The notes: generated from the sequence alone by a model not told the origin. A stretch of 64,000 bases of DNA from Mustelus asterias (GCF_964213995.1 NC_135804.1:67952001-68016000); one strand, 5' to 3'. Counted from the stretch's first letter, positions 41,893-61,035 are shown. Numbers and translations are program-made.

Positions 41893-41898
41893 TTTATT
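41893..41898 (-). promoter_or_regulatory. Candidate polyadenylation signal of the minus-strand receptor gene
   Basis: AATAAA on the minus strand about 210 nt past the stop codon at 42111. Confidence 0.4.
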
Positions 41899-42110: not shown

Positions 42111-42284
42111 TCATTTGTATATTAAGTCCCTGCCGAAGAATGCCAAATTTCTTTCATTCGGCTCTAATTTGACTGCCGCATATTCCGTACAATTTTCCTT
42201 CTGCTTCTGCATTCCTCTCTTAGCCGTACCAATCGTATTTAGGGCTGCATACGCCAAATTGCCATTGTCGCTTCTCTCCCGGAT
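42111..42284 (-). CDS. Terminal exon of an inhibitory immune receptor (ITIM plus ITSM tail)
   Basis: Acceptor tttctatgtctacag, phase 0; IRERSDNGNLAYAALNTIGTAKRGMQKQKENCTEYAAVKLEPNERNLAFFGRDLIYK*; LAYAAL fits (I/V/L/S)xYxx(L/V) and TEYAAV fits TxYxx(V/I). Confidence 0.85.
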   Translation of the reverse strand: MRERSDNGNLAYAALNTIGTAKRGMQKQKENCTEYAAVKLEPNERNLAFFGRDLIYK

Positions 42285-43449
42285 CTGTAGACATAGAAAT
42301 ATCAAACATTTAATGACACCTTTTCAGATAGATAGTTAAAAAATACTTGGACGCGCAGCCCGATGTTCTACTACAAAATCTGACTTTGGATACCTGAGTG
42401 ATAACGACATTGAAGTAGAATTATTTTACATGTTGACACCGCCCTACACAATACGCTATAACCAGGGACCTATGAATGATTATTTTCACATTTTGTACGT
42501 AAATAAATGTATGTCAAATTGTTGTGCGTCAAGAAAGATATTGTCGTTTGGTTTCCCGCCTTCAATTTCAAGCGTATACTCGATGAACATAAACAAGTTG
42601 AGCACAGAAAGATCAGATAGCCATGTGTCTATTGGTGTATTTAAAGATGCATAATCTGAATTATTCATTCAACCTTGATGCATAGTTTTCATCTTCATTC
42701 TCGATTTCAATTAGGTACTATTCGTATTAGGAGGCAATCCCCATATGTTTAAATCGTGTTGTTGTATTATTTCGTGCATGCCTGATACACCTCATCCTTA
42801 TGAAAACGACATCTTTTACAATTTTTATCGTCTCGAAATTATTTAAAAGCATGATTCGGCTGTCTTACCACTTAGAATACTGACGCTCTTCACTCATATT
42901 TTAAAATATTTCGTAGACATTGTTCTGATCTCCAGGTTCCTGCAAAAATATGCACCGTTTCTATGCTCCAATTGGATCACGCGCATTCAATTTGCATGGC
43001 CATTCCAACATGCAGAAATAGTATGGAAACGTATTTAAATTGAGTGACCACACGATGAGGCTGGACTTTTATTTTTCCTAATAGCTTGGTACAGTGCAGC
43101 ATTCAGGTATCCTTATTCTCACATTCAACTTTTACTTAAATGATTGCACGATACTGCCACTCCATCCCGAAAGACATTCCAACAGCTTCTCCCAAATTTA
43201 TTTTGTGGTTGTGAGTTTTTGCGCCTTTTCTTTCGTCCTAACTTCATTGACATGAGCTTAGTTGAATTTCAACTAATGTGCCAGGAATGCGGTATTCCCA
43301 TGTTTGTTTTTTTTAAAATAAGCATTACTCTTTTAGAACCTGTAGAACGAAAGAAAAACTGTTGCAGAAAAGAAACGACATTCAGTCCATCATTACTGCA
43401 CCGCGAAAAAAAGAGCAGGAAAGTGCTTATTTTAAGTCAGCTGCCCAGC

Positions 43450-46400
43450 ACGATTCCGTTGCCTTACAGCACGGCAGATTCAGATCCTTGTACCTTTTAA
43501 AGCATTGTCCATTTCAGCCTGAAAAGTCAACTCGCACAGTGAATTCCAAGGTGCCAGCACCAGCTTGCTGAAAAACAGTTTCCTTCATGCCCCCTGCAAT
43601 TCTATAGTCATCACCTGAAATCGTTCCTGAGTAAATTATATATCAGCTAAGTCTTTCCTGTCTATGATATTCTGCCCTCTCGTAATTTTATACGACTGAA
43701 TTAAGTCACCGCTTGCTCTCCTTGGTTCCAAGGAAAACAGATCCAATCTACATTTTTTTCTCATTGCTTCAATGTTTATTTCCTGCAACATTCATTTAAA
43801 TATCCTTTCCATGCTATCTGGAGCCATCGTCCTCTTGGTGTATTTTGGAGACTAGAACTCTACCCAAAATTCCATCTGCGACGAAACCACTGTTTGGAAC
43901 TGTTCCAACATTTATCGACCATAGCTCATTGAAAAAATGAAAATATTCATTGGTTTCTTTGCCAATTCATCCACATGACCTGCCACTTTTAGGGACCTAT
44001 GAGCATACACCCCAAGATCTCCCACGTCCGCTACCCCTCTCAATATCCTCCCGCTTATTGAGTATCCCAATGCTTTATTTGCCCTCCACTCTTACACTGG
44101 TTGAATTCTATTCACCTATTTTCTGCCCACTCCACCTAACAATGGCTCCGTGCTTCATGAAGAACTACACGGTCAATGTTCGTGTAATCTTCGGAATGTT
44201 CAATCCTGTCTCCGCGTCAACACTCATGTAACAACCATCCAGGACCCAATATTGCGCCTTCTGGAATGCCACTGGAAGTTACGCTCCAGACGCAGGCATA
44301 TTGTTTCATCATTACAATTTTTCATTCTTGTTGAACGAATTTTTCAATCAAATGGTCACTTTTCTCCTCATGCAAGAGGGTTACTTTTCTTATTGGTCTG
44401 AAATGTAGCACCTTATCAAATGACTGCACAAATATACACTGCCTCAGAAACAACCCTTGTTCCTAGCTCAATCAATGGATTAATTTGATAAGATATAAAA
44501 GCTGTTGCCTGTCCCTTATCGATAGTTGCCTTTATAAATGATATGTCATCCTGTTTCTCATAAACTAAGTGTAATAATTTGGCAAACGCCAAATTCAGAT
44601 TGGTCTATAATTATTTGAGCAGTCCCTCAAACCTTTCCAAAATAATGGTGCAATATTCACCGACCTCCAATCATATAGTAACTCGCTTTGATGAAAATTC
44701 AACATGATCCGGCAATCCGCTTTTCCAACCCTAGGTGTTTTAACAGCTTGGGTACAATTCATCCCACCATGGTGATTTTACCATCTTCAAGTACGTCAGT
44801 CCCTCCAAAACTTGCGCTCTCATGATGCCTGTCATCTCTTCCCTTACGAACCACAAAGAGGAACTACTCATTGACAACATTGCCCATATCTTTGCATCAA
44901 CACATGTTAGCTGGTACATATTTGATAAGTGCCATCTTTGCCTCAGTAATTCTCTTGCACTCCATGTAATGGCAAAACCTCTATGTATTGTCCTGCCTTG
45001 CACGTGTCAATTTTTTTTACATTTCTTTGTTTTTCTAATTTCATCTTTTGCAACATCCGTACTATTATTCTGCTGCTTTCTGCAGTAATCCAATTTTGTG
45101 ACTGACTTTTGTTTTAATTTCCTGCTTTTGCCAGAGATTTTGCAGTGATACCATATTTGCTGCGGGGTCCTATCTATATTTTGCTCATAGAATCTAGCTT
45201 TTGAAGGTCGCCCACTAAGTTGAAGCTATTTCCCCTTCGAGATGTTGTTTCGAAAGCTCACCTTTTAGCATAGAAAATGGTGTGCTCTGCAATTTAGCAC
45301 TTTTATGTCTGTTCCGATTTGTCCTTTTCTTTAATGGCAGTATGGCGCTTTCTTGGCGTTATGGTCACTCTCGAATATATATAAATATATATATGAATAT
45401 CCAGGGCCATTTCCTTAAGCACTCTGGGATGGAGATTATTTAGCCCTGGAGCTTTATCCACGTTCAATCTCCTTAATGACCGCTCAACCATCTCTCTACT
45501 AATACTGATTACCTTCAGCTCCTCGCTCGAACTTGTTTTTCTCAAAACTTCCAGTACATTATTCATGTCTTCGTTTGTGAAGGCAGAAGCAACGTACGAA
45601 TTTAGTTCCTCACTCATTTATTTGATCCGCATTATGATTTTTTTCTGTTTCTGACTGTACATTAGTTTTGTAAATTTTTTTCTCTTTACATATCCATCGG
45701 AACTATTACAGTCAGTTTTTATGTTGCCCGGTGTCTTTCTTTAATTCTCCATTTTCCCCTTCTAAGTCAATCCCTTGGTCCTATTTGCTGAATTTTAACC
45801 TGCTCCCAATACTCAGGTCTATAACTGTTTCTTGCCAGTTTGTATGTTTCTTCTTTGAATCTAATAAAACCGCTAATTTCTCTTGCAATCCATGGTTTGG
45901 CCACAGCTCCCTTACCACTCTTGCAGCAAACAGTAACAAACAACTTCTAGGAATCATAGAAACCCTACAGTATAGAAAGAGGCCATTCGGCCCATCGAGT
46001 CTGCACCGACCGCAATCCCACCCAGGCCCTACCCCCATATCCCGAAATATTTTACCCGCTAATCCCTCTAATCTACGCATCCCAGGACACTAAGGGGCAA
46101 TTTTAGCATGGCCAATCAACCTCACCCGCACATCTTTGGACTGTGGGAGGAAACTGGAGCACCCGGACGAAACCCACGCAGACACGAGGAGAATGTGCAA
46201 ACTCCTGGAGCTCAGCTCTTCGTTCCTCAATTGTCTGTCATTGCTTGCCCACTCTCCTTTCTTTCAGTCATGCTTCCTACCCTCTCATAGCCAATTCATA
46301 TCTCATACCATCATAACTACCTTTATTGGGATTCAGAATCCAGGTCTCAGACTCAACTACATCATTATCCACCATGACAAAGAATTATATCGGTTTACTC

Positions 46401-46910
46401 ATCCTTAAGGATTTTCTCTCACAATTTCTTATATTGTTCACCTCCATATGGTGCCCCCTCAAAGTTCTCTGCTCTAAGAAGAACAATCACGCCTATCCAG
46501 CCGACCAGCAAAAACAGTCGAGCCCACGCAATCTCCAAATGATTCTCCTCTGCACATTTTCCAGCAGAATTTGAACCATCCAAATGTTTGCCGACGTTGA
46601 CGGCACACATTTCTCTTCTATGGCCTACTGAGTCTTTCATACAGCTCTCTCATATCCACCTCTTATATTCCATGCCTTGCCTGGAAAAGTCAAGCACCCC
46701 TTGTGCATTTTAACCACGTTATTTCCCTATGCTGCTGCGGTCAGGACCTATGCATATGTACCTCTGTATTTCCTAGCGTCCTGCTGTTCATTGTGTATTC
46801 TTTCCATTCCAGTCCTCCGAATTCCAGGGTTGAATTCCATTTGCGCATCTTCTGTTTATTTCACCAACCAATCTGTACCGCCCTTTAATGTGAGGCTTTC
46901 CATCTCGCCA
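43450..46910 (-). mobile_element. Several decayed CR1 fragments
   Basis: MSEELNSYVASAFTNED..VDKAPGLNNLHPRVLKE and other degenerate CR1 ORF2 motifs. Confidence 0.6.
45950..46205 (-). mobile_element. HE1-type V-SINE (5'-truncated)
   Basis: Reverse complement of 22470-22712. Confidence 0.9.
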
Positions 46911-47999
46911 TGCGAAGCTGCCAGGCTGGCACTGCCCTAGTGGCAAGCTCACTTGCCCTCAGGCTCCCGGAGATGGGGCAGGGCTCAATGGCTGTTCTAT
47001 CAGAACTATTAAAACTCCGTCCCTTATGTAACTGCTGTCAGGTTATTATTCAATATTGTTTTCAAACTCAAGTATTTCGTGCAGCTTTTCTACTTTGGCT
47101 CTGCTAAAAACTGAGGAAAATGGAAAATATAGAATGGTAAGAGAATATTCACTCTCTCCTCACCATTCTCCATTACTCAGCAAATTTATGGTAATTACTC
47201 CAGTTGCACGTCATGCAGCTGAACGTAGCCGTCATTATTTGTACTACTGAGATTCAAATGACTCCACGACTTGACAGTTACAGAACGATATTAGGCCAGT
47301 TCGATATTTATCAGATCTCACCTGCTCTCGAGAAGAGATCTTCAATTAGGTTGGTCATCGCTGCACTAGCCCAGAAGAAAACTTAACAAAAGTAAATTTA
47401 TGTTGAAATGCAAAATTGCAAACAAGTCATACTACCCTTCAAATTTCAAATTTTACTCCCTCACTCGTCAATCTCCCAATAATTATACTCAATAACAGCT
47501 GCATCCCGTTTCCTTCGAGACTTCCTTTACAAGGCTGAAAATCACAATTGCACTCGCTATTCATCATAACATTGGTTTATAAAACACAAACGCGATTGTG
47601 GTAGTTTACTCTGATCAATGTTTAGATTACGCCCACCTTTCGTGGAATTGAGAATATTATGTTCCCGCAGTGGTCTATCTGACAGAATGCATAGTTTACG
47701 AATATCCTCCACAGATATGCTTCCACTTATTTGGTGCTTCGTTCAATGCTACATTGGGAGAAATGACGAGGATTTTCCGGCCGCAGTAGCCCTGAAGCCG
47801 GAATCCTGCCCGAGGTTAATCTATCCCTCGTCCTCTCAGGTTCGCCTCCCTGGCGAAAAGGGAAATTCGCCTCAATCAAAGGAGCCAGTTTCACGGCTCA
47901 AAAAGTGGTTATTATTATTCTTAAAGTATTTTTTCCGTTGAAACAGCATTATACCCATGTGCCATACGGCAAAGGCTGTGGATCGTGACATCGTGAGCG

Positions 48000-49330
48000 C
48001 AGTATTAGTAAAGGTCTGCGCTTGACGAGTTGCACCCCGAGACAGTGTTGCAGAACATCTACAACACTGCCACCAAAAGGGCGATGTGAAAAACTGCCAT
48101 TCTTTATCTGACTATGCAGAGTTAGACAAATCCAACACAGCCAATTATCAGCCTATCTGTCTTCTCTCGATAATTAGATAAGCGATGGAAGCTGAGACCA
48201 CCAGATCTACAATTTGACACTTAGAGAGCAATGCGATGTTGAACGACGATCAGGTTTGCTTCCACCAGGGCCGCTTCGTTCTGTTCAGATTTTTTTTTAA
48301 AACTTGTGTCGGAAACGAGATTTTGGGCTGGATTCAAGAGGTAAAGCGAATAAATCCCTTGATGTCAGCGAGCTAGCATTACAGCACAGCATCGTGGCAC
48401 TTTCTAAAACTGCTATCAATGATAATTTTGTCAATCGCCGAACTTGTTTTTCTTATGCCGAACAAAACGATGATGCTTGCAGTCGTAGATGCCCAAAAAT
48501 CTCACTCCCAGGCTCTTGCATCAGGAGTTTCACAGTTGTGTGTTCCAGGTCGAACAATATTTAGCTCTATCATATCTGTGTTACAAATGTTCGTCAACGA
48601 TTACAAAATTTTCATCAACATTCGCCGTCACCAGATATTGAAGCAATCGATATACATATGCAAAAAAAGCCTGGACTACAATGATGTTCCAGCTGATAAG
48701 TGAAAAGTAACATTCACGCAATGCAAGTGACAGGCAATTATCTTATTCAACTGGAGAGAATCTAACTAGCTCCTTCATATCCAAATATGTAATTGTCGCT
48801 ATTTCATCCACTATCAACATTCTCGATGTTACCATTGAAAAACATCGCAACTTGACGAGCAATGTAAATACAATAGCGAAAAGAGAGTGTCAATATTTGG
48901 TTTGCTGCGGTGAAGAACTCACCACTTGCCTTTCAAATTATGTCCACGATTTAACCGGACAGGAATTAGGTGTACAATGGAATAACCTTCACTTTCCTGG
49001 AGCGGTATAGCTTTAAAAGCCAAGGATCTCGATATGGTTCAAGCCGAAGCAAGCTACTCGATATGGCACGCGATCTACCACCTTCGGTATTCGCTCCATC
49101 CACCAAAGGCACACTGCGCCTGCAGCGTGTGTAGGATCTATAAGTCGGACTGAAGCAACTCACCATATTTTCTTCAATACCACCTTCCCAAATACACATA
49201 TTCTACGACTGAGACGCAGAAGACATGCAATGCCATGCATTCCCATTCAAGCATCTAGCATCCTGACTCGGAACAAACTTGCCTTTCCTTCCCTGGCTCT
49301 GGGTCCAAAACATGCAACAACTTCTCTGAG
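48000..49330 (+). mobile_element. Decayed L2-like LINE
   Basis: tccaacacagccaattatcagcctatctgtcttctctcg (NTANYQPICLLS); collinear with 34765-36177. Confidence 0.65.
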
Positions 49331-49419
49331 AACACGAGTGAACTTGTTAAATATTCATCTCACGTTATTCGTAAAATTCAAATGCAAATTTGCCACAGAT
49401 TCTTAGGCATTAACAGGAA

Positions 49420-50060
49420 AGTAAGCGGTGATTAGGACCAACAAATATCTGATTGCAACGATCCCATTTTTCAGTGACTTGCCCAAAACTCTGGAGGGTA
49501 TGGCAGTGAAAGCTATTATCTACCTACTTCTTAAATATGACGGCATTTCTTCTTCAACCACCCATGCAGTGAGTTCCAAAGATGCACCACCCTGTGGTTG
49601 AACAAAATCTTCCTCATCGCTCCTGTCAGCATTCAGCGTCTTGACATAAAGCAATGGGGTTATCGACCCACTTTGAATGGCAAACCTGCCTTCATTTTAA
49701 CCCTGTCAACGTCCCTTCTAATCTCAAACACCTCAATTTGCTCCCCTCTTAAACTTTGCTTCTCCAAGTAAAACAGCCCCAGTCCATCCAACCGTTCCTC
49801 AAGTCTCAGATCAGCCAGCACTTGAAGCATGTTGGTAGATCTCCTCTGCACGCTTTCGAATCCAATCAAATACGTCCGATAATGTGATGACGAGAACTGC
49901 ACACATCATTCCAGTTGTGGCCTAACAACAGTTTCATGTAATTACTGCATGACTACCCTGCCGTTTGATTCCATACCTGTGCTACTAAACGCAAGTACCA
50001 CATATGCATACTTAACCACCCTTTTTCCTTCTCCTGTCACCTTCAGGGATCTGTGCACAT
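49420..50060 (-). mobile_element. Decayed CR1 3' fragment
   Basis: QFSSSHYRTYLIGFESVQRRSTNML..EERLDGLGLF. Confidence 0.7.
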
Positions 50061-50958
50061 GTTTATGGGGTCGGGGGTCGGGGGGGGGGGGGGGTGATTA
50101 GGCTGATAGAAAACACGTAATCATGGTTTGAGAACACTAACACAAATCTGACTTAAGAATGAATGATCTTAGACAAGAGAAAGCGCTGACAAGAGGCTGT
50201 CACTTGAAGAGAGATCTAACTGAATAACAAGTATTTCCCATTTACAACATGCGTTTTGAATACATAAAGTGGATGTAGTTTGTTCTCAGAAAACATCTTG
50301 TGAAACTTCAGCGAACAGCAAGGTACAACAGGGCTTGATGGATGAGGCAGTAGACAGATCCTGCATTTACGAGGAAAATGGTGTTACTGCATGCGGCCAC
50401 CTTATTCGCAGTTGTCGGGAACAAAACGTCTACCAATACCAGTTTGATGAATAGAACTATACAGCTCCAAACACAGGTGCAAAGAAGACATAAGGATTTT
50501 CTCAGGGTCGGACGTGTGCCAAGTGTGTTTGAGTCTTTGGGAATCATTCTACCATTTCACTGTCCAGCATCTCGTGCTGCTGAGCAACCGAGGGAGGTAA
50601 CCTCCAGAATTAAGGACCAACAAGATCCCAGGAGGTCAGGCTGTTAGTTGTTATTGGCTGGAGTCGGAGACAGGGATGGCTATTGACTGATTTGTTGGAA
50701 TGTTTACTGGATTATGCTTACGGGAAAGGTGGGAAATCTGATTTTGAAAATGTATAATTGCCCTCACGGAGGCATTGCGCTTCAGAGTTATATTGGGCTG
50801 CCCGCATTCTCTACCTGGAGTGCTGGGCTTCTTTATATCATTCTCCATTCGATCGGTTGGTTGATAAAGTCACGTCTTAGAATCAGTACATTGAGTTCGT
50901 GAGTCTCTATGTTGGCTTAATTTGTAGCAATGCACAGCCTCTAAAGAAAACCTCATCA
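50060..50958 (+). repeat. ERV 5' LTR
   Basis: Collinear with 55837-56772 (catggtttgagaacactaacac..gaatgatcttagac..gaaagcgctgacaagag); ends CATCA. Confidence 0.8.
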
Positions 50959-51319
50959 ATTATTTGGCGCTGCCCACCGGCTGCCTTCATTGGCATAAGT
51001 TGGCAGGACTCGACTCCTAAGTGAGGGTGAGTATATTTTTATATTTGTTAGAGGAGTCCTTTTCAGGCCGTCAGGACCATAAGCTGACTCACGCGAATCG
51101 ACGTGAGGGTGTGTGGACCACAGTGTTACTGCAGAGTAAACCGCGCTCAGAGGAGGGGGGGAGGGGTGTGGATGGACAAAAGCTACCGCTCTCCATAGCG
51201 GACTGAAAAGGCATGCGGTAGGGCAGACGTGAGGACTTGAGGGCATTCAATACGAAGGACCGCGGTGAAAAATACCTCGATCACTTAGCCAGCAGGGCCA
51301 GAGAGAGCTGCACCCAAGG

Positions 51320-51772
51320 CAGTGCCGGATTTAGACTTGGTGAGGTCCTAAGCTATATAAAGCTTGGAGGCCCCTTGTTAAAAAGTTACAGTTTAAAAAC
51401 TGGAAACGTAATTATGTTGTTTCAACCGTGGATGTCGGCTCTGCAACGCTCACATTTGCATCACTTCCAGTGTTTTCCTCAGCTGAGATTCCAGCCTCTG
51501 TTGTCTCAGTAGCAGATGAACTAGGCTATGGTTGTTTTGGACTTTGAGGATCACCTTGGGTTTGCGGATCCTTATCTGTCTCTGGAGTAAATTAACTGTC
51601 AACTTTTGGTAAGCTTTTGAGTTGCTCTTCAAGCTGATGCTTTCTTTTTCTTTTCTGGTATCTGCTCTTAAATGTTCTCTTCATTGTAAACCTTCTGAAA
51701 TTGTGTGAGGCCCCTATGGATTGTGAGGCCCCAAGCTGTAGCTTGTTTAGCTTATGCCTAAATCCGGCACTG
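51320..51772 (-). mobile_element. Non-autonomous hAT (Tip100-like) deletion derivative
   Basis: Perfect 15-bp TIRs CAGTGCCGGATTTAG / CTAAATCCGGCACTG; the minus strand from ATG 51684 reads MKRTFKSRYQKRK/KHQLEEQLKSLPKVDS, a transposase-like N-terminus. Confidence 0.78.
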
Positions 51773-52399
51773 AACCACTCGAAGAGAGAGAGAGAGAGAG
51801 TGCCGCACCAAGAAGTGACAGAGGTTATCGGCGCTAGAGGTCCTCACAGGACGACAGCTAAGGGGTGATTAGGAGACAAAAATAGTGAAAGCGCTCGAGA
51901 GAGAGCGTCAGAAGTCCCCGTGGAAGGGGGTGTTGTGGGGGAGGGCGGGGGGGGGGGGGGGGCGTGGGGGGCGAGGGTGGTGAGAGTACCAGGTGGGCTT
52001 ACAGTGGGACTCAGGAAGTTTACAAAATACAGAGAGAGAACGGCAGACAGGCTGTGAGTATCCAAGACAGCCTGTGACACACAGAGAGGGCCGATCAGAA
52101 GGGTCGGAACGCCCTCGTGTGAATGCTTGTAAATTGCAGGTCAATTGTTAAACCGTTTCCAAATACCAGGAGTTAGTGTTTTTAGTGGAATTAATGCAGA
52201 CACGTTAAAATCAAATAGGGTCTTGAAATTGCTTAATTTTGAGAACGGACGAAGACCAAGGGAATTCTGAAAAAAAAAGGATACGAATTCCACAGTGATT
52301 TGAACTCTGCAATTTTTGGAGAGGTGATGTGTGTGCTCTCGGTAGGTGGTGGGGCGTTGTGTTTCGGAAATTGTAAGGAGAGTTAAAGAGTGAAAGAAG

Positions 52400-53336
52400 A
52401 TAGAATATAGAACATTACAGCACAGTACAGGCTCTTCGGCCCTCGATGCTGTGCCGAGCTTTGTCCGAAACCAAGATCAAGCTATCCCACTCCTTATCAT
52501 TCCGGTGTGCTCCCTGTGCCTATCCAATAACCGCTTGAAATTTCCGAAAGTGTCCGACTCCACTATCACAGCAGGCAGTCCATTCCACAGCCCAAGCACT
52601 CTCTGAGGAAAGAACCTATCTCGGACATCCCTCCTATATCTCTCAACATGAACCCTATAGTTATGCCCCCTTGTAACAGCTCCATCCACCCGAGGAAATA
52701 GTCTCTGAAGGTCCACTCTATCTATCCCCCTCATCATCTTATAAACCTCTATGAAGTCGCCTCTCATCCTCTTCCGCTCTAACGAGAAAAGCCCTGGATC
52801 CCTCAACCTTTCCTCATAAGACCTACCCTCCAAACCAGGCAGCATCCTGGTAAATCTCCTCTGCATTCTCTCCAATGCTTCCACATCCTTCCTATGGTGA
52901 GGTGACCAGAACTGCACACAATATTCCAAATGTGATCTCACCAAGGTCCTGTACAGTTGCAACATAACCGCACGCTCATAAACTCAAACCCCCGTTAATA
53001 AACGCTAACACACTATAGGCCTGCTTCACGGCTCTATCCACTTGAGTGGCAACCTTCAGAGATCTGTGGATATGAACCCCAAGATCTCTCTGTTCCTCCA
53101 CATTTCTCAGAACCCTGCCGTTGACCCTGTAATCCTCTTTCAAATTTGTCCTACCAAAATGAATCACCTCGCACTTATCAGGTTTAAACTCCATCTGCCA
53201 TATTTCGGCCCAGCCCTGCATCCTATCAATGTCTCTTTGCAGCCTACAAAAGCCCTCCACCTCATCCACTACTCCACCAATCTTGGTGTCATCAGCAAAT
53301 TTACTGACCCACCCTTCAGCCCCCTCCTCCAAGTCA
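52400..53336 (-). mobile_element. CR1 3' fragment inserted in the ERV; same subfamily as 2168-3958
   Basis: ORFs 52477-52965 and 52976-53332 are nearly identical to the C-terminus of ORF 2246-3652 (..RHMEHT..SGIA*). Confidence 0.92.
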
Positions 53337-54618
53337 ATAAATATGATAGTCTTAATTTAGCAGTTATAGTTGGGAATTGGAATATTTAAAAGCGATTCTG
53401 ATAATCTTGTTTTCGATTGATCTTAACAAAAACGAATAATGAGATAAAGCTTAGAATTAGTTTCTGAAAGTACGGAATTTTGACCTGATGATGTCCATTG
53501 AAGAAAATGTACTCTGCCCTTTTTTGAAATAAATAGAGATTTGACCCCATTCTGTCCCAGACAGAATGAATTTTTTTGTTTTAAGGTTTTGCAGCAGCTT
53601 TAAGGCATTCCAGAATTCATTTGTCTATGTTAAATACAGTAAATGTATTATCGTGAATCAAAATCTAGTATGGGGAGAGAATTTAGTGAAGAGTTACACA
53701 TGGAAGTATGGGAGTGAGTGTTTAATGATTCACAGATTAGTATAATCAGAAATGAGGGAAATAACCCAGTGGAATAAACTAACGTTAAAGGAAAGGAATA
53801 GGTATGGGATGTGGGAAGTGATCAGGGTCATCAAAGAGACATTATAGAACAGGTAAATAGAGTAGGACGGAATTAAAGCTGGGATTCCTTTGATGGATAC
53901 ACAGAACAGCAATGGTCATAAGGAATATACATTTAACGAGATTCTAGAAAGTAAAACGCAGTTTAAGTGATTGTTGTGGATGAAGAAGCTTTTAAAAATC
54001 AAGAGATTAAATAGACACTTATGAACAGTTGAAAGCCCATAACTCTGTTTTTCTGCATTTGGGACAATTCTGACATTAAGAAAATGCGCTGAAAGCAAGC
54101 TACCTTAATAACATTATGCCATTTAAGATAAACCACGAGCAATAGAAATAAATTACTGTCTGGAATCAAATTGAAAACTTTGATTTCTGTTTCAAAAATG
54201 CCATTATGTCATAGAATTCTGTAAAATAGTGGAAATTCCAGAGGACCGGAAGAAGGTTATGCTTTATGTTCAAAGATGTCTCCCCGGAAAGGGGTAAGAC
54301 AAATATTGGAGTTTTTAAATTACTACAGGAATTTTGTAGAACATTATGCTGTACCTGCCGAACCTTGACATTACCTGATTAAGGGAGGAAAACCTAGAGG
54401 TGAGAAAGTAATATGGGGAAATACAGAGAAGCAGGCTTTTTCAGTTTAAAACAGGCCGTGTAAAGGTCCCTGCCTTGGGACTGACAGCTGTCAAGAGAAC
54501 GATGGAATGCAAGCTGTGACAGAAGCCCAATAACATGGAGACAGAATAAGACCAGTGAGGTGCTACTCCTATATTTCCAGGAGACAACAGCAGAGAGAAT
54601 GCTGCAGGAGAGTTAACA

Positions 54619-54855
54619 GTGCAAGGGACAGAGCATGAATGTGTCGTGAAAGTGACAGAAACAGCAAGCGAAAGGTTAGCAGAGGAACCACTCGCAGGGG
54701 AAGGAGTGATTAATCTGTATGTAGATAGAGCCAGAAAGTATGTCAATGGTGAACGCCACATGGCATGGACGGTGGTGAATGGCGAAGGAACAGGAATTGC
54801 AGGAGAACAAATCCCAGGGAGTAATTCAGCACAAGTAGCACATTTGTTCGATTGA
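54619..54855 (+). pseudogene. pol: Retroviral pol relic: tether end and RNase H N-terminus
   Basis: EHEC..LYVDRARKYVNGERHMAWTVV..IPGSNSAQVA fits the retroviral RNase H consensus F/Y-x-DGS..G..VV..LP..SAQxAE. Confidence 0.75.
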
Positions 54856-55244
54856 ACAAATACTTAAAATGCAGACTCAGAGGGCAAACGATAAGGCTGA
54901 TGAGAATATGAGAGAGCTGTTGGTACAGCCCAGACGGAATTCAAACAGCGGGTCTGGCAGCCGCACAAGCCAGGGAAGTCGCAGACATTGATGTGAAATA
55001 AATACAGGAACAAGCATCAGAGGAAGAGAAAGATAAATGGGAAAAACGTGGAGGAAAGAGTGGTCAATATGGTGCATGGAGAATCGAATATCGAAGAATA
55101 GTCCAAGAAGTAATACAACAGGTCATATTGGCGGCAAATCGTATTGGTTTCCTGTTGGATGAAGGGTTCTTATTACCTTAGAGAATCTTCCGTGCACATC
55201 TCATACTCTTAAACTCCCTTGCTTGCCAAGACATCTGCGTGCTA

Positions 55245-55700
55245 CTACAGAGGGAGAACATTTTTGGCACAGTGTTTCCCCAATATGGAGTGGCTAGAAC
55301 AATGCAAGAGATTATAATTGTGTGCTCCAGTTTGAACAAGTTGCCAAATGATACAGCAACTGCCCTTGTGAAGATGAATTTCTGAGATGGTTGCCATGCG
55401 TACAGAATGGCATTGGGTTACGCCGTGGCAGCAAGGGGAGGGACATGGGCAGTAATTAGATTGGAATGTTGCATTTATATATCAGACAGAAAACATAACT
55501 AGTCTGGTTGTACACATCAAGAAGGAGGTGAAGAAACTCAAAGACCCTGAACAATTCATCTTTGGTGGTTGGCTCTCAAGCTGGATAGGTTATTTGGGTA
55601 CATCGATCCTGTAAGGGATTATATTATTTTTTATTGTGAAACAAGTGTCAGCAGTAATTGCATATTTGATCAGGACTGTCTAAGTCCATAGAAAGCACAA
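55245..55700 (+). pseudogene. env: Retroviral env TM-subunit relic
   Basis: VFPQYGVA fusion-peptide-like stretch and a heptad region; 55404-55487 reads RMALGYAVAARGGTWAVIRLECCIYISD (immunosuppressive domain plus degenerate CX6CC). Confidence 0.8.
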
Positions 55701-55836
55701 CAGCAGTGATGGCAGTCAGAATAAGCAAGAGTAGACCCCAGTAACCAACTTGTTCTTTAAGGACCAAGGCTAGTTACTAAGATCATCTTGTGTAGTGGCC
55801 TTACTTGGTCTTTGACCAACAGCCAAGAGGGGGGAC

Positions 55837-56772
55837 TGATGTAAGTGGGCTCAATTAGGCTAATTTAAAAAAAACACATGGTTTGAGAACACTAACACCA
55901 TACTGACTTAAGAGTGAATGATCTTAGACGAGAGAAAGCGCTGACAAGAGACTGTCAATTAAAGAGAGACCCAACTGAATGACAAATATCTCCCATTTAA
56001 AACATGTATTTTTTAATTTATAAAGTGGATGCAATTTGCTTTTAGTATACATTTTGTGAAACTTCATCAACAGCAAGATACAGCAGTGCTTGGTGGGATG
56101 AGGCAGCAAGACAGTGCTTGCATTCTGTAGGACAATAGTTTTGCTGAATGTGGCGACTTTATCAGCAGTTGTTAGGAACAAAATGGCTACAAATGCCCGC
56201 TTTATGAACAGAAACTATTCAGCTCAAAACTGGTAACATAGGTGCAAGGCAGACATAAGGATTTTCTCAGGGTCAGAAGAGTGCCACGTGGGTTAGAGTC
56301 TGTGGGACTCATTCTCTATTTCACTACCCAGGGTAACTGAGCGAGGTCACATTCGAAATTAAGGACAAATGAGATCCCTTGAGTTCAGTGTGTCAATTGT
56401 TATTGACTGGAGTTGGTGATACGGATGATTAGTGACTGATTTGTGTTAATGTTTGCTGGATTATGCCACGATGGCACAGTGGTTAGCACTGCTGCCTCAC
56501 AGCGCCAGGGACCGGGTTCAATTCCCGGCTTGGGCCACTGTCTGTGTTGCGTTTGCACGGTCTTCGTTCGTTTCCTCCGGGTGCTCCGGTTTCCTCCCAC
56601 ACTCTGACAGACGTGCTGGTTAGGTGCATTGACCCGAACAGCGCTGGAATGTGGCGACACGGGGAATTCCACAATAACTTCATTGCAGTGTTAATGTAAG
56701 CCTTACTTGTGACTAATAAATAAACTTTACTTTACTTTCCAGGAAAGGCGGGAAAATTGATTTTGAAAATGT
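55837..56772 (+). repeat. ERV 3' LTR (SINE-interrupted, 3'-truncated)
   Basis: Starts TGATG immediately after the PPT; resumes at 56740 with ggaaagg..gattttgaaaatgt, matching 50721-50753. Confidence 0.8.
56468..56737 (+). mobile_element. HE1-headed V-SINE with alternative tail
   Basis: ggcacagtggttagcactgctgcctcacagcgccaggg head; tail gccttacttgtgactaataaataaactttacttt. Confidence 0.85.
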
Positions 56773-58115
56773 TGGGCCAATTCATCTAACCTGCACATAT
56801 TTTGACAGTGGGAAGAAACACGAGCACGTGGAGGAAGGCATGCAGACAGGGGGCGGGGGGGGGGGGGGCGGCGCGGGGTGGGGGGAAGGGGTAAGGGGTT
56901 GGGGAGACGGTGTGGAGGGGGGGATTGTGCAAACTCCAGAGAGTCACCCAAAGCGGGAATTGAAGCCGGGTCCCTGGAGCTGCGGGGGAATATTCCTTGT
57001 CTTCCAGCTGTCGCCAAGGAGGATTTGAAAATTACTGTCGATGCCCCACATATCTCCTCACCTGCCTCCCTCAACAACCTGTGATGCATATCATCCATGC
57101 CTGCAGTTGTGCTCACTTTTAAGGCCGTTAAGCATGCTAGTACCTTCTTGCTTTATGTTAATTTTCTTTAAAATTTCATAGTCTTCCACTCTGATGCCTA
57201 CTACTGCGTCCTCTTTTTCCATTGTGAAGATCGTTGCAATGTTATTGAGGACTGTATCCACAACTTCCGGGTCATCCTACAGATTTCCTATATGGCCTCT
57301 AATTGACCCTATGGTTTTCCTCATATTATTTGGTACTTAATTTATTTAAAGTATATTTAGATGACCTGCATTCGAGTTCCTGATTTGGAGTCTGCCTGAA
57401 TCTGCCAATTAGGGAGTGGTTGTGCCGTGCTATTGATTGACATATTCAGAGAAGCACAAATTCACGATAAATATCTCTAAAATGGAAAATATGGCATATT
57501 AGCGAATACTAATATGAAATATTTCCTGTCAGTTGTCCCTGAGGTTAGCAACGAAGGGTTTTCCTACAAAATTGAGGTTACTTTGGAAATCTTGAAAACA
57601 TATTTTTCCCGTCATAATCTCATCTCTTTAATATCTTTAATTCTCTCTCTTTTTCCGCACCTCTCCCTTGTTCAATTTTAGGTTTCATATTTCTTTTTTT
57701 TAGGTGCAGACGTTCACGTTGAATTACAGCTCCAAATTAAATTATAGGTCTGCGTGCGGATTGGTCAACCTGCTCGTTAAATTTCTGTTGCACAGTAAAA
57801 TACGGATGTTGACATTTGAAAAACAGCCATACAGTTTAACACCTAAGTGCCTTAACGTTGGTCGTACAGGCTCTGCAACCTCAACGACTTCAACTTTGAA
57901 AACAGAATCGGAGCCGTTTTCATTCCATTTTCCAACGTACAAACTGATAATGAAAACTAAACTGGAAGTTCTGTTCGTCATTTCTAAAGCGGTATGCCAG
58001 AATTAGCAGATAAACATAATCTAAGATTTTGAGCACGTAAATAAAGAAACAGAAAACGAACATTTTTTTGAACGTAACAAAACGAATTCACTGCGTTTAA
58101 AACATATAAACATAC

Positions 58116-58153
58116 CGTTTCTGCAGAAGGAGGCGATACATCTCCAGCTGTCA
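58116..58153 (-). CDS. Short cytoplasmic exon of the inhibitory receptor
   Basis: Acceptor ttttttatttccaatgcatag and donor gtatgt; 38 nt, phase 1 to 0, (V)TAGDVSPPSAET; joins the TM and terminal exons in frame. Confidence 0.65.
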
Positions 58154-58537
58154 CTATGCATTGGAAATAAAAAATCGAAACGAAATTGTCAGGTTGTTTG
58201 TTTTACAGAGCAGGTGAGAATACAGTTTGCATCTTTGAAGTAACATACGGTTCCGAATTCTCCCATAGCGCTCGCCACTGGAATTTCAGCGGGCGGTGGG
58301 GGTAGTGGGGGGCGGGGTGGGGGGGGGGGGGGGGGGGAGAGTGGGGAGTGCTGGACGATGTTAACGTCCATTGAAGCCGGGAAGGAATCTCCGGTTTTTA
58401 GGCGAGCGCAGCCGGAGATCTGACATTATAAATGTACATAAATATAATTGTGCACGCACTATTCAAATACTCAACTCGCGTCAAATTTCGACATGCATTT
58501 TAACATTTTAAACGTAAATTGCTAAATCTGTTCTTAC

Positions 58538-58648
58538 CTTTGCAAGTCCGTAACGCGCATTGCTTCCCGATGATGGTCACAAGCACAAGACAGACGAGCC
58601 CACTGACGACGCACCCAGCTGTCAACAGTACAAATTTAATGCCGGTAT
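58538..58648 (-). CDS. Transmembrane exon of a type I receptor
   Basis: Acceptor attaatcttgcag and donor AAG|gtaaga; 111 nt, phase 1-1; (D)TGIKFVLLTAGCVVSGLVCLVLVTIIGKQCALRTCK with an uncharged hydrophobic core followed by a basic/Cys juxtamembrane segment. Confidence 0.85.
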
Positions 58649-58774
58649 CTGCAAGATTAATGAATGTTACTGAGAGGAATCTTCATATAGGAATAGGGAA
58701 AAAAATAACTCCAAAAGGATGACAAAATAACTGCACAAAAAATATTTTATTAGCTTCCTCCTTTCAGTGCAACT

Positions 58775-61035
58775 GTGATTTGATTCGATATATTGTTGTC
58801 ACATATATTAGTATACAGTGAAAAGTATTGTTTCTTGCGCGCTATACAGGCAATGAATACCGTTCATTGAGAAGGAAAAGTGAGAGGGCATGGAATCCAA
58901 GGGGCTGCTGCCCTGTGGATCCAGAACTAGCTGGCCCAAAGGAGGCAGAGAGTGGGTATAGATGGGTATTTTTCTAAATGGAGGTCGGTCACGAGTGGTA
59001 TGCCCCAGGGATCAGTTCTGGGACCCTTGCTGTTTGTCATTTTCATAAATGACCTGGATGAGGAAGTGGAGGGATGGGTTGGTAAGTTTGCCCACGACAT
59101 GTCAGAAGTTACAGAGGGATAGATAGGATGCAAGACTGGGCGGAGAAGTGGCAGATGGACTTCAACCCAGATAAATGCGTAGTGGTCCATTTTGGCAGGT
59201 CAAATGGGATGAAGGAGTACAATATTAAGGGACAGACTCTTAGTACGGTAGAGGATCAGAAGGACCTTGGGGTCCGGCTCCATAGGACTCTAAAATTGGC
59301 CCCGCAGGTGGAGGAGGTGGTTAGGAAGGCGTATGGTGTGCTGGCCTTTATCAATCGAGGGATTGAGTTTAGGAGTCCGGGGATAATGATGCAGCTATAT
59401 AAGACCCCCGTCAGACCCCACTTAGAGTACTGTGCTCAGTTCTGGCCGCCTCATTACAGGAAGGATGTGGAAAAGATTGAAATGGTGCAGAGGAGATTTA
59501 CAAGGATGTTGCCTGGATTGAGTGGCATGCGTTATGAGGATAGGCTGAGGGAGCTCGGTCATTTCCCCTTGGAGAGACATAGGATGAGAGGAGACCTAAT
59601 AGAGGTATATAAGATGTTGAGAGGCATAGGTCGGGTGGACTCTCAGAGGCTTTTTCCCAAGGTGGAAATGGCTGCTACGACAGGTTTAAGTTGCTGGGGG
59701 GGTAGGTACAGGGGAAATGTTTGGGGGGACGTTTTTTACACAGAGGGTGGCGGGCGGATGAAATTGGCTGCGGTCAGTGGTGGTGGAGGCAAACTCAATA
59801 GGTTCTTTTAAGAGACTCCTGGATGAGTACATGGGACTTAATAGGATGGAGGGTTATAGGTAGGCCTAGAAGGTAGGGATATTTTCGGCACAACTTGTGG
59901 GGCCGAACGGCCGGTTTTGTGCTGTAGTTTTTCTATGCTTCTATGTTTCGAAGGAAAGGAGAGAATGCAGAATGTAATGTTACAGTCATAGCTACGGTGC
60001 AGAGAAAGATCAACGTAATGCGAGGTAGGTCCATTCAAAAGTCTGATGGTAGCAGGGGAAAAACTGTTCTTGAGGCGGTTGGCACGTTAAATCGGACTTT
60101 GGTATCTGTTTCCCGACAGAAGAAGGTGAAAGAGAGTATGTCGGGGGTCCGTGGGATCATTGATTATGCTAACTGCTTCTCCGAGGCAGCAGAAAGTGTA
60201 GACAGTGCCCATGGATGGGAGGCAGGTTTGATTGGTGGACTGGGCTTCATTCACATCCCTTTGTAGTTTCTTGCGGTCTTGGGCAGAGCAGGAGCCATAG
60301 CAAGTTGCGATACAATCAGAAAGAATGTTTTCTAAGGTGCATCTGCAGATGTTGGTGAGAGTTGTTGCAGACATGACCAATTTTCTTTTTCTGCTGAGAA
60401 AGTCGAGGCGTTGTTGGGCTTTCCTATCTATAGCGTCCGCTTGGAGGAACCAGGATAGTTTGTTGATGATCTGGACACCTAAAAACGTGAGGCTCTCCAC
60501 TATTTCTACTTTGTCTCCATTGATGCAGACAGGGGCATGCCCTCCACTACGCTTTCTGAAGCTGATGACTTTCTCTTTCGTTTTGTTGACATTGAGTAAG
60601 AGATTATTGTGGTCACCCAGTTCACCAGATTATCTATCTCTTTCCTGCACAATGTCTCGTCATTAATGAGATCCAGCCCACAACCGTGGTGTCATCAGCA
60701 AACTTGAAAACCGAGTTGGATGGGAATTTGTCCATACAGTCAAAGGTGAATAAGGAATATAGTAAGGGGCTGATGCCATAGCCTTGCGGGAGCACCGATG
60801 TTGAGGATGATCACGGAGGAGGTGTTATTGCCTATCCTTACTGATTACGGTCGGTGGTTTAGGAAGTCAAGGATCCAGTCGCAGAGAATGGAGCCGAGCC
60901 CTAGGCCATGAAGTTTAGAGATGAACCTCGGAGGAACAATCGTGTTAAAGGCTGAGCTGCCGTCTATGAATAAGAGTCTGACATAGATGTCTTTGTTTTC
61001 TAGGTGTTCTAGGGTTGAGTATAGGGCCAGGGAGA
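58775..61035 (-). mobile_element. Rex1/Babar LINE 3' part, split by a CR1 insertion
   Basis: [34 protein letters not shown]; the tail gatttgatt at 58778 continues after 59949. Confidence 0.85.
58881..59948 (+). mobile_element. CR1 3' fragment
   Basis: ORF 59128-59811 is nearly identical to ORF 62563-63507; (ctatgtt)n tail; flanked by gaaggaaa(a)g on both sides. Confidence 0.92.

What the first reader, a model, noticed from the sequence alone, without database searches (positions are those of the whole stretch)
42111..58648. Spliced gene for an ITIM+ITSM inhibitory immune receptor hidden among repeats
Seen: three minus-strand exons with canonical AG/GT sites and compatible phases (1-1, 1-0, 0-stop) join into DTGIKFVLLTAGCVVSGLVCLVLVTIIGKQCALRTCK-VTAGDVSPPSAET-IRERSDNGNLAYAALNTIGTAKRGMQKQKENCTEYAAVKLEP..*. 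An AATAAA lies downstream. The TM has no charged residue and the two Tyr are 23 residues apart. Established: an ITIM followed by an ITSM about 24-25 residues later is the layout in SIRP-alpha and PD-1 that recruits tandem-SH2 phosphatases SHP-1/SHP-2, and a phase-1 TM exon is typical of IgSF genes. Inference: this is a cartilaginous-fish SIRP/NITR/NKp30-like checkpoint receptor whose Ig exons lie beyond 64000. Orthology cannot be assigned from this window.
Basis: partly seen in the sequence, partly recalled or inferred. Interest (0 to 1): 0.85.

Follow-up and report, generated by a model that had tools for sequence, protein, structure and literature searches.

The report
Shark antigen-receptor-like inhibitory receptor tail
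These three exons are the real membrane anchor and signalling tail of a shark gene whose outer part looks like an antibody light chain and whose tail carries two conserved motifs of the kind that switch immune cells off.

Summary
Confirmed. The three minus-strand exons (58648-58538, 58153-58116, 42284-42111) have the stated splice sites, phases, stop codon and downstream AATAAA. The motif pair alone is weak evidence: 21 of 100 simulated windows contain one. Homology settles it. An exhaustive search with the tail exon alone found RefSeq XP_078066426.1 of the shark Mustelus asterias (335 aa, misnamed "immunoglobulin lambda-1 light chain-like"). Residues 1-228, outside the window, are a leader, a V domain with a J-like GxG strand and one C1 domain. 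Orthologues occur in nine shark species and their tree follows the species tree. The ITSM is canonical in 8 of 8 tails, the ITIM in 6 of 8, and the Tyr-Tyr spacing is 23 in 6 of 6. Paralogues include short-tailed forms with Arg in the membrane span, so the family looks like a paired-receptor family. It is not a demonstrated SIRP, NITR, NKp30, UrIg or B7 member. Seven full-text searches found no description. No RNA run was available, so splicing rests on the gene model and cross-species conservation. The scan has noted sister genes elsewhere in this genome.

The parts
58538..58648 (-). Stalk end, transmembrane and juxtamembrane exon (111 nt, phase 1-1). It encodes residues D229 (split codon) to K265 of XP_078066426.1. 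The hydrophobic core is uncharged.
   Evidence: sequence, AG/GT sites. (tblastn of P0001 residues 228-265 to 58652-58539, 97%). (predicted helix 234-261). (no charged residue in the core).
58116..58153 (-). Short cytoplasmic linker exon (38 nt, phase 1-0), residues V266 (split codon) to T278.
   Evidence: (P0001 residues 264-279 to 58160-58113). The linker is conserved in orthologues.
42111..42284 (-). Last coding exon: cytoplasmic tail, residues I279-K335, plus the TGA stop at 42113-42111.
   Evidence: (100% identity to P0001 residues 279-335, E 5e-29)..
42240..42257 (-). ITIM LAYAAL (Tyr290).
   Evidence: Y290, A291, A292, L293 and N294 are invariant in 7 of 7 aligned orthologues.
42171..42188 (-). 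ITSM TEYAAV (Tyr313), 23 residues after Tyr290.
   Evidence: T311, Y313, A314 and A315 are invariant in 7 of 7. The motif is canonical in 8 of 8 orthologue tails.
41893..41898 (-). AATAAA polyadenylation signal about 213 nt after the stop codon. Its use is inferred, not shown.
   Evidence: pattern search on the minus strand; the first ~210 nt after the stop, which hold no AATAAA.
58154..58537 (-). Intron between the TM and linker exons (384 nt). It holds a C-rich low-complexity stretch (G-rich on the + strand, 58295-58346).
   Evidence: DNA contigs run continuously through it.
42285..58115 (-). Intron between the linker and tail exons (15,831 nt). No further match to the protein lies inside it.
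   Evidence: no other significant tblastn match of P0001 in the window.
58649..64000 (-). Part of the intron upstream of the TM exon. It is filled with LINE reverse-transcriptase fragments, and no Ig exon lies here.
   Evidence: ORFs; RVT_1 at 62563-63507; no Ig-domain match; word depth in the hundred-thousands to millions from 58773 on, so highly repeated DNA.

Best explanation
The finding is the 3' half of a functional single-copy shark gene, Mustelus asterias XP_078066426.1. The gene encodes a type I membrane receptor made of a leader, a germline V domain ending in a J-like GxG strand, one Ig C1 domain similar to light-chain and TCR constant domains, a short stalk, an uncharged transmembrane helix and an 80-residue disordered tail. 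The tail carries an ITIM (Tyr290) and an ITSM (Tyr313) 23 residues apart. Most likely mechanism (inferred): when the ectodomain binds its unknown ligand next to an activating receptor, Src-family kinases phosphorylate both tyrosines. The doubly phosphorylated pair docks the tandem SH2 domains of SHP-1/SHP-2, which dephosphorylate nearby signalling proteins and damp the cell. This is how SIRP-alpha and PD-1 work. Paralogues with the same ectodomain but an Arg in the membrane span and a 5-8-residue tail are the likely activating partners, signalling through an acidic-TM adaptor, so the family would be a paired-receptor system. Shown here: exon structure, identity with the public model, domain types, conservation of motifs and spacing, and existence of the paralogue types. 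Inferred: expression, phosphorylation, phosphatase recruitment, adaptor pairing and ligand.
For: The exons and splice sites are as described. The tail exon searched alone against 1.84 billion representatives gave 3 proteins at E<=0.001. The best was P0001, 100% identical over its last 57 residues, and it is XP_078066426.1 of Mustelus asterias. Pfam finds V-set/Ig_3 at 27-119 and C1-set at 143-212 with E 1.8e-11, against 0.0048 for CD80-like C2-set. A family profile aligns best to the J-C-lambda part of a PDB chain (86 bits). Foldseek's top rows are antibody light chains and TCR chains (E 3e-15). There are eight shark relatives at 46-67% identity, and the orthologue clade of 9 rows has 100/100 support and follows shark phylogeny. 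The ITSM is canonical in 8 of 8 tails, the ITIM in 6 of 8, and the spacing is 23 in 6 of 6. The motif residues are invariant while the residues between them vary. The AF2 model has a TM helix at 234-261 and a disordered tail. Paralogues P0016 and P0017 have a TM Arg and tails of 5 and 8 residues, and P0017 and P0015 lie on the same 152.9-Mb contig as P0001. SIRP-alpha ITIMs recruit SHP-1/SHP-2, and SIRP-beta pairs with DAP12 through a positively charged TM residue (passages of PMC12975943). PD-1 carries ITIM plus ITSM (passages of PMC11599192).
Against: There is no transcript evidence. No RNA run of this organism was offered, and the two runs laid are DNA contigs with no spliced joint. The motif pair arises by chance in about a fifth of windows of this size. 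Two orthologue tails have a non-canonical ITIM: Met at -2 in Chiloscyllium and Ala at +3 in Scyliorhinus torazame. An ITSM can also recruit SAP-type adaptors and switch the signal (recalled, not tested). One contig of run X2 carries a change in the acceptor AG of the TM exon (58650), so at least one allele may splice differently. Two public models (P0010, P0011) lack the TM exon residues exactly, so TM-less products may exist. The structure-based search ranks B7-H6, a ligand, first, although tied with many two-domain IgSF proteins.
Confidence: 0.78

Rival explanations
1. The gene is a B7-family (B7-H6 or B7-H3-like) cell-surface ligand rather than a receptor. Its V-C ectodomain would be read by a receptor on another cell, and the tail would have a minor or reverse-signalling role.
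For: NCBI's automatic names for three family members are 'natural cytotoxicity triggering receptor 3 ligand 1-like' and for one 'CD276 antigen homolog'. CD276 aligns over both domains (67 bits, positions 34-217). B7-H6 is the top row of the representative-wide structural search (Z 15.7, rmsd 5.0, 192 aligned, 26% identity).
Against: The rows within one Z unit are tied, and they include Rst, PD-L2, Neph1 and butyrophilins. Other automatic names for the same orthologue group are SIRP-alpha-like, tapasin-related and Ig-lambda-like, so the names carry little weight. In the alignment the family's conserved G-strand motif (NGTGS) finds no matching GxG in CD276. The second domain scores as C1-set far better than CD80-like C2-set. 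Inhibitory members alongside TM-Arg members are a receptor hallmark. B7-H6 is not among the best 60 sequence matches of the V domain.
Confidence: 0.08
2. The gene is the shark orthologue of SIRP-alpha, a true member of the SIRP family that lost one C1 domain.
For: It has a V domain with a J-like strand followed by a C1 domain, an uncharged TM and a tail with an ITIM-type pair. TM-Arg short-tailed paralogues resemble SIRP-beta (SIRP features from passages of PMC12975943). SIRP-alpha is hit at 61 bits. Three family members are auto-named SIRP-alpha-like.
Against: There is one C1 domain, not two, and one tyrosine pair, whereas as I recall SIRP-alpha has four tyrosines. SIRP-alpha scores no better than antibody chains, CD276 or UrIg2. 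SIRP-gamma is only rank 41 structurally (Z 13.6). No SIRP appears among the best 60 matches of the V domain. No synteny could be examined.
Confidence: 0.1
3. The tail acts as a switch or activating module, with the ITSM recruiting SAP/EAT-2-like adaptors as in SLAM-family receptors, or it does not signal at all.
For: The ITSM is the more strictly conserved of the two motifs (8 of 8 against 6 of 8). That ITSMs can bind SAP-family adaptors is recalled knowledge, not tested here.
Against: The fixed 23-residue spacing in 6 of 6 orthologues and the invariant YAALN core fit a two-site docking unit for a tandem-SH2 protein. Paralogues multiply the same unit four times (P0003, P0018).
Confidence: 0.08
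4. The exons are chance ORFs among repeats, or a dead gene copy.
For: The motif pair alone is expected 0.22 times per window, and 9 TM-like stretches occur in the window. The surroundings are LINE debris.
Against: The exons match a public protein model exactly and are conserved in order and sequence in eight other shark species. Motif residues are invariant, the frame is open and all splice sites are canonical.
Confidence: 0.02

Closest known systems
SIRP-alpha / SIRP-beta paired receptors (tetrapods)
   Same: Both have a V domain with a J-like strand followed by C1-set Ig, an uncharged TM and a tyrosine-motif tail that recruits SHP-1/SHP-2. Both have sister genes with a positively charged TM residue and a very short tail (SIRP features: passages of PMC12975943; shark features).
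   Different: The shark protein has one C1 domain instead of two and one ITIM/ITSM pair instead of, as I recall, four tyrosines. Sequence similarity to SIRP is no higher than to antibody chains, CD276 or UrIg2. The ligand is unknown.
UrIg and UrIg2, the described non-rearranging VJ-C1 genes of elasmobranchs (PMC12227049)
   Same: All are shark genes with a V domain ending in a J-like strand followed by C1-type domains. UrIg2, like this gene, was auto-annotated as an Ig light chain (sections 4 and 7 read). UrIg2 is hit at 62.6 bits.
   Different: UrIg has three C1 domains and is only secreted. UrIg2 has nine or more C1 domains plus a TM. The words ITIM and ITSM occur 0 times in that paper. This gene has one C1 domain and an ITIM/ITSM tail and belongs to a family with TM-Arg members.
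PD-1 (CD28 family)
   Same: ITIM followed by ITSM in the tail, and an uncharged TM (passages of PMC11599192).
   Different: PD-1 has a single V domain and no C1 domain.
NITRs of bony fish
   Same: A multigene family, mostly ITIM-bearing with a few activating members (abstract listing of PMC2442602). As I recall, their V domains also carry a J-like motif.
   Different: As I recall, the second NITR domain is I/C2-type, not C1. NITRs are described from bony fish only. They were not compared by sequence here.
B7-H6 / B7-H3
   Same: A two-domain V-C ectodomain. B7-H6 is the best structural row (Z 15.7, 26% identity) and CD276 aligns over both domains.
   Different: In the alignment the family's G-strand GxG finds no matching GxG in CD276. 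These proteins are ligands, not paired receptors. The structural scores are tied with many unrelated two-domain IgSF proteins.
PRARP (chicken and other non-mammalian vertebrates; Fu et al. 2019, recalled; cited in PMC10751288)
   Same: As I recall, a non-rearranging VJ-type V domain with a possible ITIM in the tail.
   Different: As I recall, the architecture is V-C2, or V only in birds. The paper is not in the library and no sequence was available, so this was not tested.

Membership tests
ITIM/ITSM inhibitory IgSF receptors (functional class) | Type I membrane protein with Ig ectodomain and an uncharged transmembrane span | tested here: met
   V-set and C1-set domains. Helix 234-261. No charged residue in the 21-residue core.
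ITIM/ITSM inhibitory IgSF receptors (functional class) | Cytoplasmic [ILVS]xYxx[ILV] followed by TxYxx[VI] at a spacing suited to tandem SH2 domains | tested here: met
   LAYAAL at Tyr290 and TEYAAV at Tyr313, spacing 23. The spacing is 23 in 6 of 6 orthologues. ITSM canonical in 8 of 8, ITIM in 6 of 8.
ITIM/ITSM inhibitory IgSF receptors (functional class) | Phosphorylation-dependent recruitment of SHP-1/SHP-2 and inhibition of signalling | not testable with these tools
   Needs biochemistry.
SIRP family | One V-set plus two C1-set domains | tested here: not met
   Only one C1-set domain in 335 residues. The SIRP layout is from PMC12975943.
SIRP family | Closer in sequence or structure to SIRPs than to other V-C1 proteins | tested here: not met
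   SIRP-alpha scores 61.2 bits against 86 (lambda-like chain), 67 (CD276) and 62.6 (UrIg2). SIRP-gamma is rank 41. No SIRP appears in the best 60 matches of the V domain.
SIRP family | Binds CD47 | not testable with these tools
   Needs a binding assay.
Immunoglobulin light chain (the RefSeq name) | V-J-C chain without membrane anchor or signalling tail, made from a rearranging (or germline-joined) Ig locus | tested here: not met
   The window encodes a TM helix and an 80-residue tail continuous with the C1 domain in the model. RSS or rearrangement status of the V exon could not be read because it lies outside the window.
UrIg / UrIg2 | VJ domain followed by three (UrIg) or nine or more (UrIg2) C1 domains | tested here: not met
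   One C1 domain. UrIg and UrIg2 layouts are from PMC12227049 sections 4 and 7.
NKp30 (NCR3) | Single V domain without a C domain (V-only layout recalled; the paper read calls NCR3 a nonrearranging VJ-domain gene) | tested here: not met
   A C1 domain is present.
NITR | V domain plus I/C2-type second domain; bony-fish gene clusters | tested here: inconclusive
   The second domain here is C1-set (E 1.8e-11). No NITR sequence was available for comparison. The NITR domain type is recalled.
B7 family | V domain without the J-like GxG bulge plus a C domain; acts as a ligand of CD28 or NCR-type receptors | tested here: inconclusive
   A GxG (NGTGS) is present in all 14 V-C1 rows of A3, and the V-only row P0003 has GTL instead. 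In the aligned CD276 G strand the GxG finds no match. B7-H6 nevertheless tops the tied structural list.
Paired activating/inhibitory receptor family | Closely related ectodomains on ITIM tails and on short tails with a basic TM residue | tested here: met
   P0016 and P0017 have a TM Arg and tails of 5 and 8 residues. P0001, P0013, P0015 and P0018 have long tyrosine-motif tails. All align over V and C1. Adaptor pairing itself was not tested.

The most novel reading that the evidence does not exclude
This gene is the conserved founding member of an undescribed, shark-wide third lineage of non-rearranging, antigen-receptor-like VJ-C1 genes, beside UrIg and UrIg2. Unlike those two, it is wired directly to immune signalling, with ITIM/ITSM tails in some members and an Arg-bearing membrane span in others. 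It would then be the cartilaginous-fish counterpart of KIR, NITR and SIRP paired receptors. It could also be a living relative of the signalling receptor from which rearranging antigen receptors, or SIRPs, arose.
Probability: 0.35. Interest if true: 0.8.

Novelty: new variant of a known kind. Interest (0 to 1): 0.58.

Why it matters
Single-exon VJ genes joined to C1 domains are sought as relatives of the gene the RAG transposon invaded. The recent literature I could read presents UrIg and UrIg2 as the shark examples, and neither is described with inhibitory motifs (PMC12227049). Here an antibody/TCR-like V-C1 ectodomain sits on a classic inhibitory tail, is conserved in all nine shark species found, and has activating-type paralogues. 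If expressed on leukocytes, it would give sharks a paired-receptor system that, in the papers I could search, has not been described for cartilaginous fish. It would also make testable whether V-C1 receptors signalled through ITIM and adaptor routes before somatic rearrangement existed. On the practical side, the RefSeq names of this orthologue group (Ig lambda-like, tapasin-related, SIRP-alpha-like, CD276, NCR3LG1-like) are mutually inconsistent and misleading.

Tried and rejected
RNA evidence. The look-up of sequencing runs (kind rna) listed no RNA holder. The two listed runs, laid on 57500-59500, are short DNA contigs that run through the introns, with no spliced joint.

I therefore could not read the V and C1 exons, the intron upstream of the TM exon, or any neighbours or synteny.

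Relatives outside sharks. Three word-indexed searches (P0001, profile A2, profile A3) returned family members from sharks only. One search also gave three weak unrelated Ig hits (45, 36 and 29 bits). The index needs shared 5-residue words and a length window, so absence in rays, chimaeras or bony vertebrates is not shown.

Family placement. Sequence against PDB, Foldseek and the representative-wide structural search show an antigen-receptor-like V-C1 unit but do not single out one known family. The ESM Atlas look-up gave only generic Ig clusters, the best scoring 0.94 and possibly being the protein's own cluster. A phylogeny with curated SIRP, B7, NITR, PRARP or NKp30 sequences was not possible, because no such sequences were held as stored proteins and sequence from memory is barred.

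Literature. Seven full-text searches found no paper describing a shark V-C1 receptor family with ITIM/ITSM tails. The UrIg paper in J Immunol 2023 is not held. Fu et al. 2019 (PRARP) and Flajnik et al. 2012 (B7H6/NKp30) were not in the library and are cited from recall only. Supplements are closed, and the supplementary gene tables of PMC12227049 and PMC10751288 might list this gene.

MHC linkage. A scan-notes look-up for 'MHC class' showed 8 of 107 fitting notes, all on other pieces of the genome. That gives no evidence either way.

Full report
OBSERVATION. On the minus strand the window holds three short exons exactly as described. The first is 58648-58538, preceded by ttgcAG and followed by GTAAGA. 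It encodes a split Asp codon and then TGIKFVLLTAGCVVSGLVCLVLVTIIGKQCALRTCK. The second is 58153-58116, preceded by gcatAG and followed by GTATGT, and encodes (V)TAGDVSPPSAET. The third starts at 42284 after ctacAG and runs for 57 codons to TGA at 42113-42111. The phases are 1-1, 1-0 and 0-stop. The tail holds LAYAAL (ITIM) and TEYAAV (ITSM), with the tyrosines 23 residues apart. An AATAAA on the same strand lies at 41898-41893.

IS IT MORE THAN CHANCE? The motifs alone do not establish it. The ITIM..ITSM pattern occurs once in the six-frame translation. A first-order Markov model of the window gives 0.22 per window, with at least one occurrence in 21 of 100 simulations, and the window has 9 hydrophobic stretches of TM quality. 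Independent evidence was therefore needed.

HOMOLOGY, EXON BY EXON. I sent only the tail exon (57 aa, by reference) to the exhaustive HMMER search of 1.84 billion representatives. Three proteins reached E<=0.001.
- P0001 (335 aa) is 100% identical over its last 57 residues, E 5e-29.
- P0002 is a partial Scyliorhinus torazame protein holding TM, linker and tail in the same order.
- P0003 is a Heterodontus protein whose tail repeats a similar tyrosine-motif unit four times.
P0001 is RefSeq XP_078066426.1, 'immunoglobulin lambda-1 light chain-like [Mustelus asterias]'. tblastn of P0001 against the window places residues 228-265, 264-279 and 279-335 on the three exons and gives no other significant match. 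The window therefore encodes residues 229-335, and residues 1-228 lie outside it. The 5.3 kb between the TM exon and the window end is LINE debris. A first-stage scan note (s1-891871, unchecked) places a VJ-C1 exon pair 10.9 kb beyond the window end.

WHAT THE PROTEIN IS. Pfam finds Ig_3/V-set at 27-119 and C1-set at 143-212 with E 1.8e-11, against 0.0048 for CD80-like C2-set. The V domain ends in YCCG, then nine residues, then NGTGSTIVV, a J-like GxG strand present in all 14 V-C1 family members aligned. The V-only isoform row P0003 has GTL there instead. A profile of seven orthologues aligns best to the J-C-lambda part of a PDB chain (86 bits). It includes the FYP, W-x-x-G and YxCxVxH hallmarks of C1 domains. 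CD276 (67 bits), UrIg2 (62.6) and SIRP-alpha (61.2) are all at about the level of ordinary Fab chains. The AlphaFold2 model (mean pLDDT 68, with ten-residue block means of mostly 68-91 over the Ig domains) has two beta-sandwich domains, a helix at 234-261 and a disordered tail. Foldseek's best matches are antibody light chains and TCR chains (E 3e-15). The representative-wide structural search puts B7-H6 first (Z 15.7, rmsd 5.0, 192 aligned, 26% identity). That row is tied within one Z unit with Rst, PD-L2, Neph1, B7-H3 and butyrophilins, and SIRP-gamma is rank 41. The V domain alone matches only generic Ig domains: contactin, Robo and pIgR, then PD-L1, CD79a and TCR-beta. B7-H6, NKp30 and SIRP are absent from the best 60 of 1332 matches. 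The ectodomain is thus an antigen-receptor-like V(J)-C1 unit that no solved family claims.

CONSERVATION. Word-indexed searches found the same protein in nine shark species:
- Mustelus asterias
- Scyliorhinus canicula
- S. torazame
- Heterodontus francisci
- Rhincodon typus
- Stegostoma tigrinum
- Chiloscyllium plagiosum
- Heptranchias perlo
- Pristiophorus japonicus
Identities are 46-67%. The automatic names contradict one another: Ig lambda-like, tapasin-related, SIRP-alpha-like, CD276 homolog, NCR3LG1-like. In a maximum-likelihood tree of 17 family proteins these form a 100/100 clade of 9 rows. Its branching follows shark phylogeny as I recall it: Heptranchias, then Pristiophorus, then Heterodontus, then Carcharhiniformes beside Orectolobiformes. 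That is the pattern of a single-copy orthologue. In seven full-length orthologues Y290, A291, A292, L293, N294, T311, Y313, A314 and A315 are invariant, while the residues between the motifs vary.

Eight orthologue tails were scored. S. canicula P0008 was dropped because its model has a different C-terminus, and P0009 because it is truncated. The ITSM is canonical in 8 of 8. The ITIM is canonical in 6 of 8; the misses are Chiloscyllium (Met at -2) and S. torazame (Ala at +3). The Tyr-Tyr spacing is 23 in 6 of 6 proteins with both canonical motifs. Two models (P0010, P0011) lack exactly the residues of the TM exon. This confirms the exon boundaries in other species. Because the exon is 111 nt long, it also means an in-frame TM-less product is possible.

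THE FAMILY. Profile searches also returned paralogues.
- P0015 (Mustelus) and P0013 (Heptranchias) have long tails with an ITIM-like motif.
- P0016 (S. canicula) and P0017 (Mustelus) have an Arg inside the membrane span and tails of 5 and 8 residues.
- P0012 has two V domains and a TM Arg.
- P0014 and P0019 have short uncharged tails.
- P0018 and P0003 (Heterodontus isoforms) carry four repeats of the motif unit.
P0015 and P0017 lie on the same 152.9-Mb contig as P0001. The pairs P0013+P0015 and P0016+P0017 are each well supported. The first pair, Heptranchias with Mustelus, links two species that branch far apart in the orthologue clade of the same tree, so that duplication is probably old. 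The second pair only links two Carcharhiniformes. Unchecked scan notes report further such genes and clusters in this genome, one 96 kb and others about 9 Mb before the window, and some on other pieces. I verified only the three Mustelus proteins above.

MECHANISM. The following are shown: an uncharged TM helix, basic juxtamembrane residues on the cytoplasmic side, a disordered tail, and two conserved tyrosine motifs at fixed spacing. The rest is inferred from the established behaviour of SIRP-alpha and PD-1 (passages of PMC12975943 and PMC11599192). Src-family kinases would phosphorylate both tyrosines. The pair would bind the tandem SH2 domains of SHP-1/SHP-2, and these would damp nearby activating signals. 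The TM-Arg paralogues would signal through an acidic-TM ITAM adaptor, as SIRP-beta does through DAP12. From memory, known tandem-SH2 docking pairs have spacings of roughly 23-26 residues.

WHAT COUNTS AGAINST IT.
- There is no transcript evidence. No RNA run was offered, and the two runs laid are DNA contigs with no joints at the exons.
- The RefSeq model is automated and I could not see its support.
- One contig of run X2 (depth 20) carries T>G at 58650 on the + strand. This changes the acceptor AG of the TM exon to CG, alongside a synonymous change at 58608. X1 and X2 come from the same sample and X1 shows the reference base, so this may be an allele. I did not follow it further.
- The structural top hit is a ligand, B7-H6.
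- Two orthologues have non-canonical ITIMs.

COMPARISON WITH WHAT IS KNOWN. The described non-rearranging VJ-C1 genes of elasmobranchs are UrIg (three C1 domains, secreted, liver) and UrIg2 (nine or more C1 domains, TM). The words ITIM and ITSM occur 0 times in that paper (PMC12227049: outline, sections 4, 7, 13 and 16, and a term search). The closest analogue by function and layout is SIRP-alpha/beta. However, the defining two C1 domains are not met, and similarity to SIRP is no greater than to other V-C1 proteins. NITR, NKp30, PD-1, B7 and PRARP each share some features and fail others (see the membership table). Seven full-text searches found no description of this family. Several key subscription papers and all supplements were out of reach, so 'not in print' is provisional.

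VERDICT. The coding structure already exists in RefSeq under a misleading name, so the exon model itself is not new. What appears new is the reading: a conserved shark V(J)-C1 receptor with an ITIM/ITSM tail, belonging to a family with activating-type partners. I class it as a new variant of a known kind (paired inhibitory IgSF receptors) and rate its interest as moderate to high for comparative immunology. Two things temper that rating: the lack of expression data, and the fact that the scan has flagged sister genes many times in this genome.

Noticed in passing
window 58650 (also 58608, 58666, 58667, 58693): One DNA contig of run X2 (depth 20) differs from the window at 58650 (T>G on the + strand), which turns the acceptor AG of the TM exon into CG. 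Run X1 of the same sample shows the reference base. This may be an allele that skips or re-splices the in-frame TM exon.
   Followed up: partly
proteins P0010 (Pristiophorus) and P0011 (Chiloscyllium, isoform X2), alignment A1: Both public models lack exactly the residues of the 111-nt TM exon while keeping the linker and tail. This suggests an in-frame TM-less (soluble) isoform, or a model error shared by two species.
   Followed up: partly
window 17151-18044 (+), 19678-20307 (+), 2246-3652 (-), 62563-63507 (-): These are LINE remnants: three ORFs with reverse-transcriptase domains and one with a GDSL-lipase-like domain, which as I recall is typical of the esterase ORF1 of CR1/L2-type LINEs. 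DNA from 58773 onward has word depths in the hundred-thousands to millions, so this element is extremely abundant in the genome.
   Followed up: partly
window 40471-40555, 51937-51971, 58295-58346: Similar G-rich (C-rich on the minus strand) low-complexity tandem stretches recur, one of them inside the short intron between the TM and linker exons. They are probably tails of one SINE-like repeat.
   Followed up: no
proteins P0003 and P0018 (Heterodontus francisci): Two isoforms of a paralogue carry four tandem copies of a roughly 37-residue tail unit with LTYAAL, an unusual amplification of the inhibitory module. One isoform lacks the C1 domain.
   Followed up: partly
protein P0002 (Scyliorhinus torazame) versus window 58718-58649: The catshark partial model reads through what is intron in Mustelus, upstream of the TM-exon acceptor. 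It still aligns at the protein level, so the catshark model start is probably intronic read-through.
   Followed up: no
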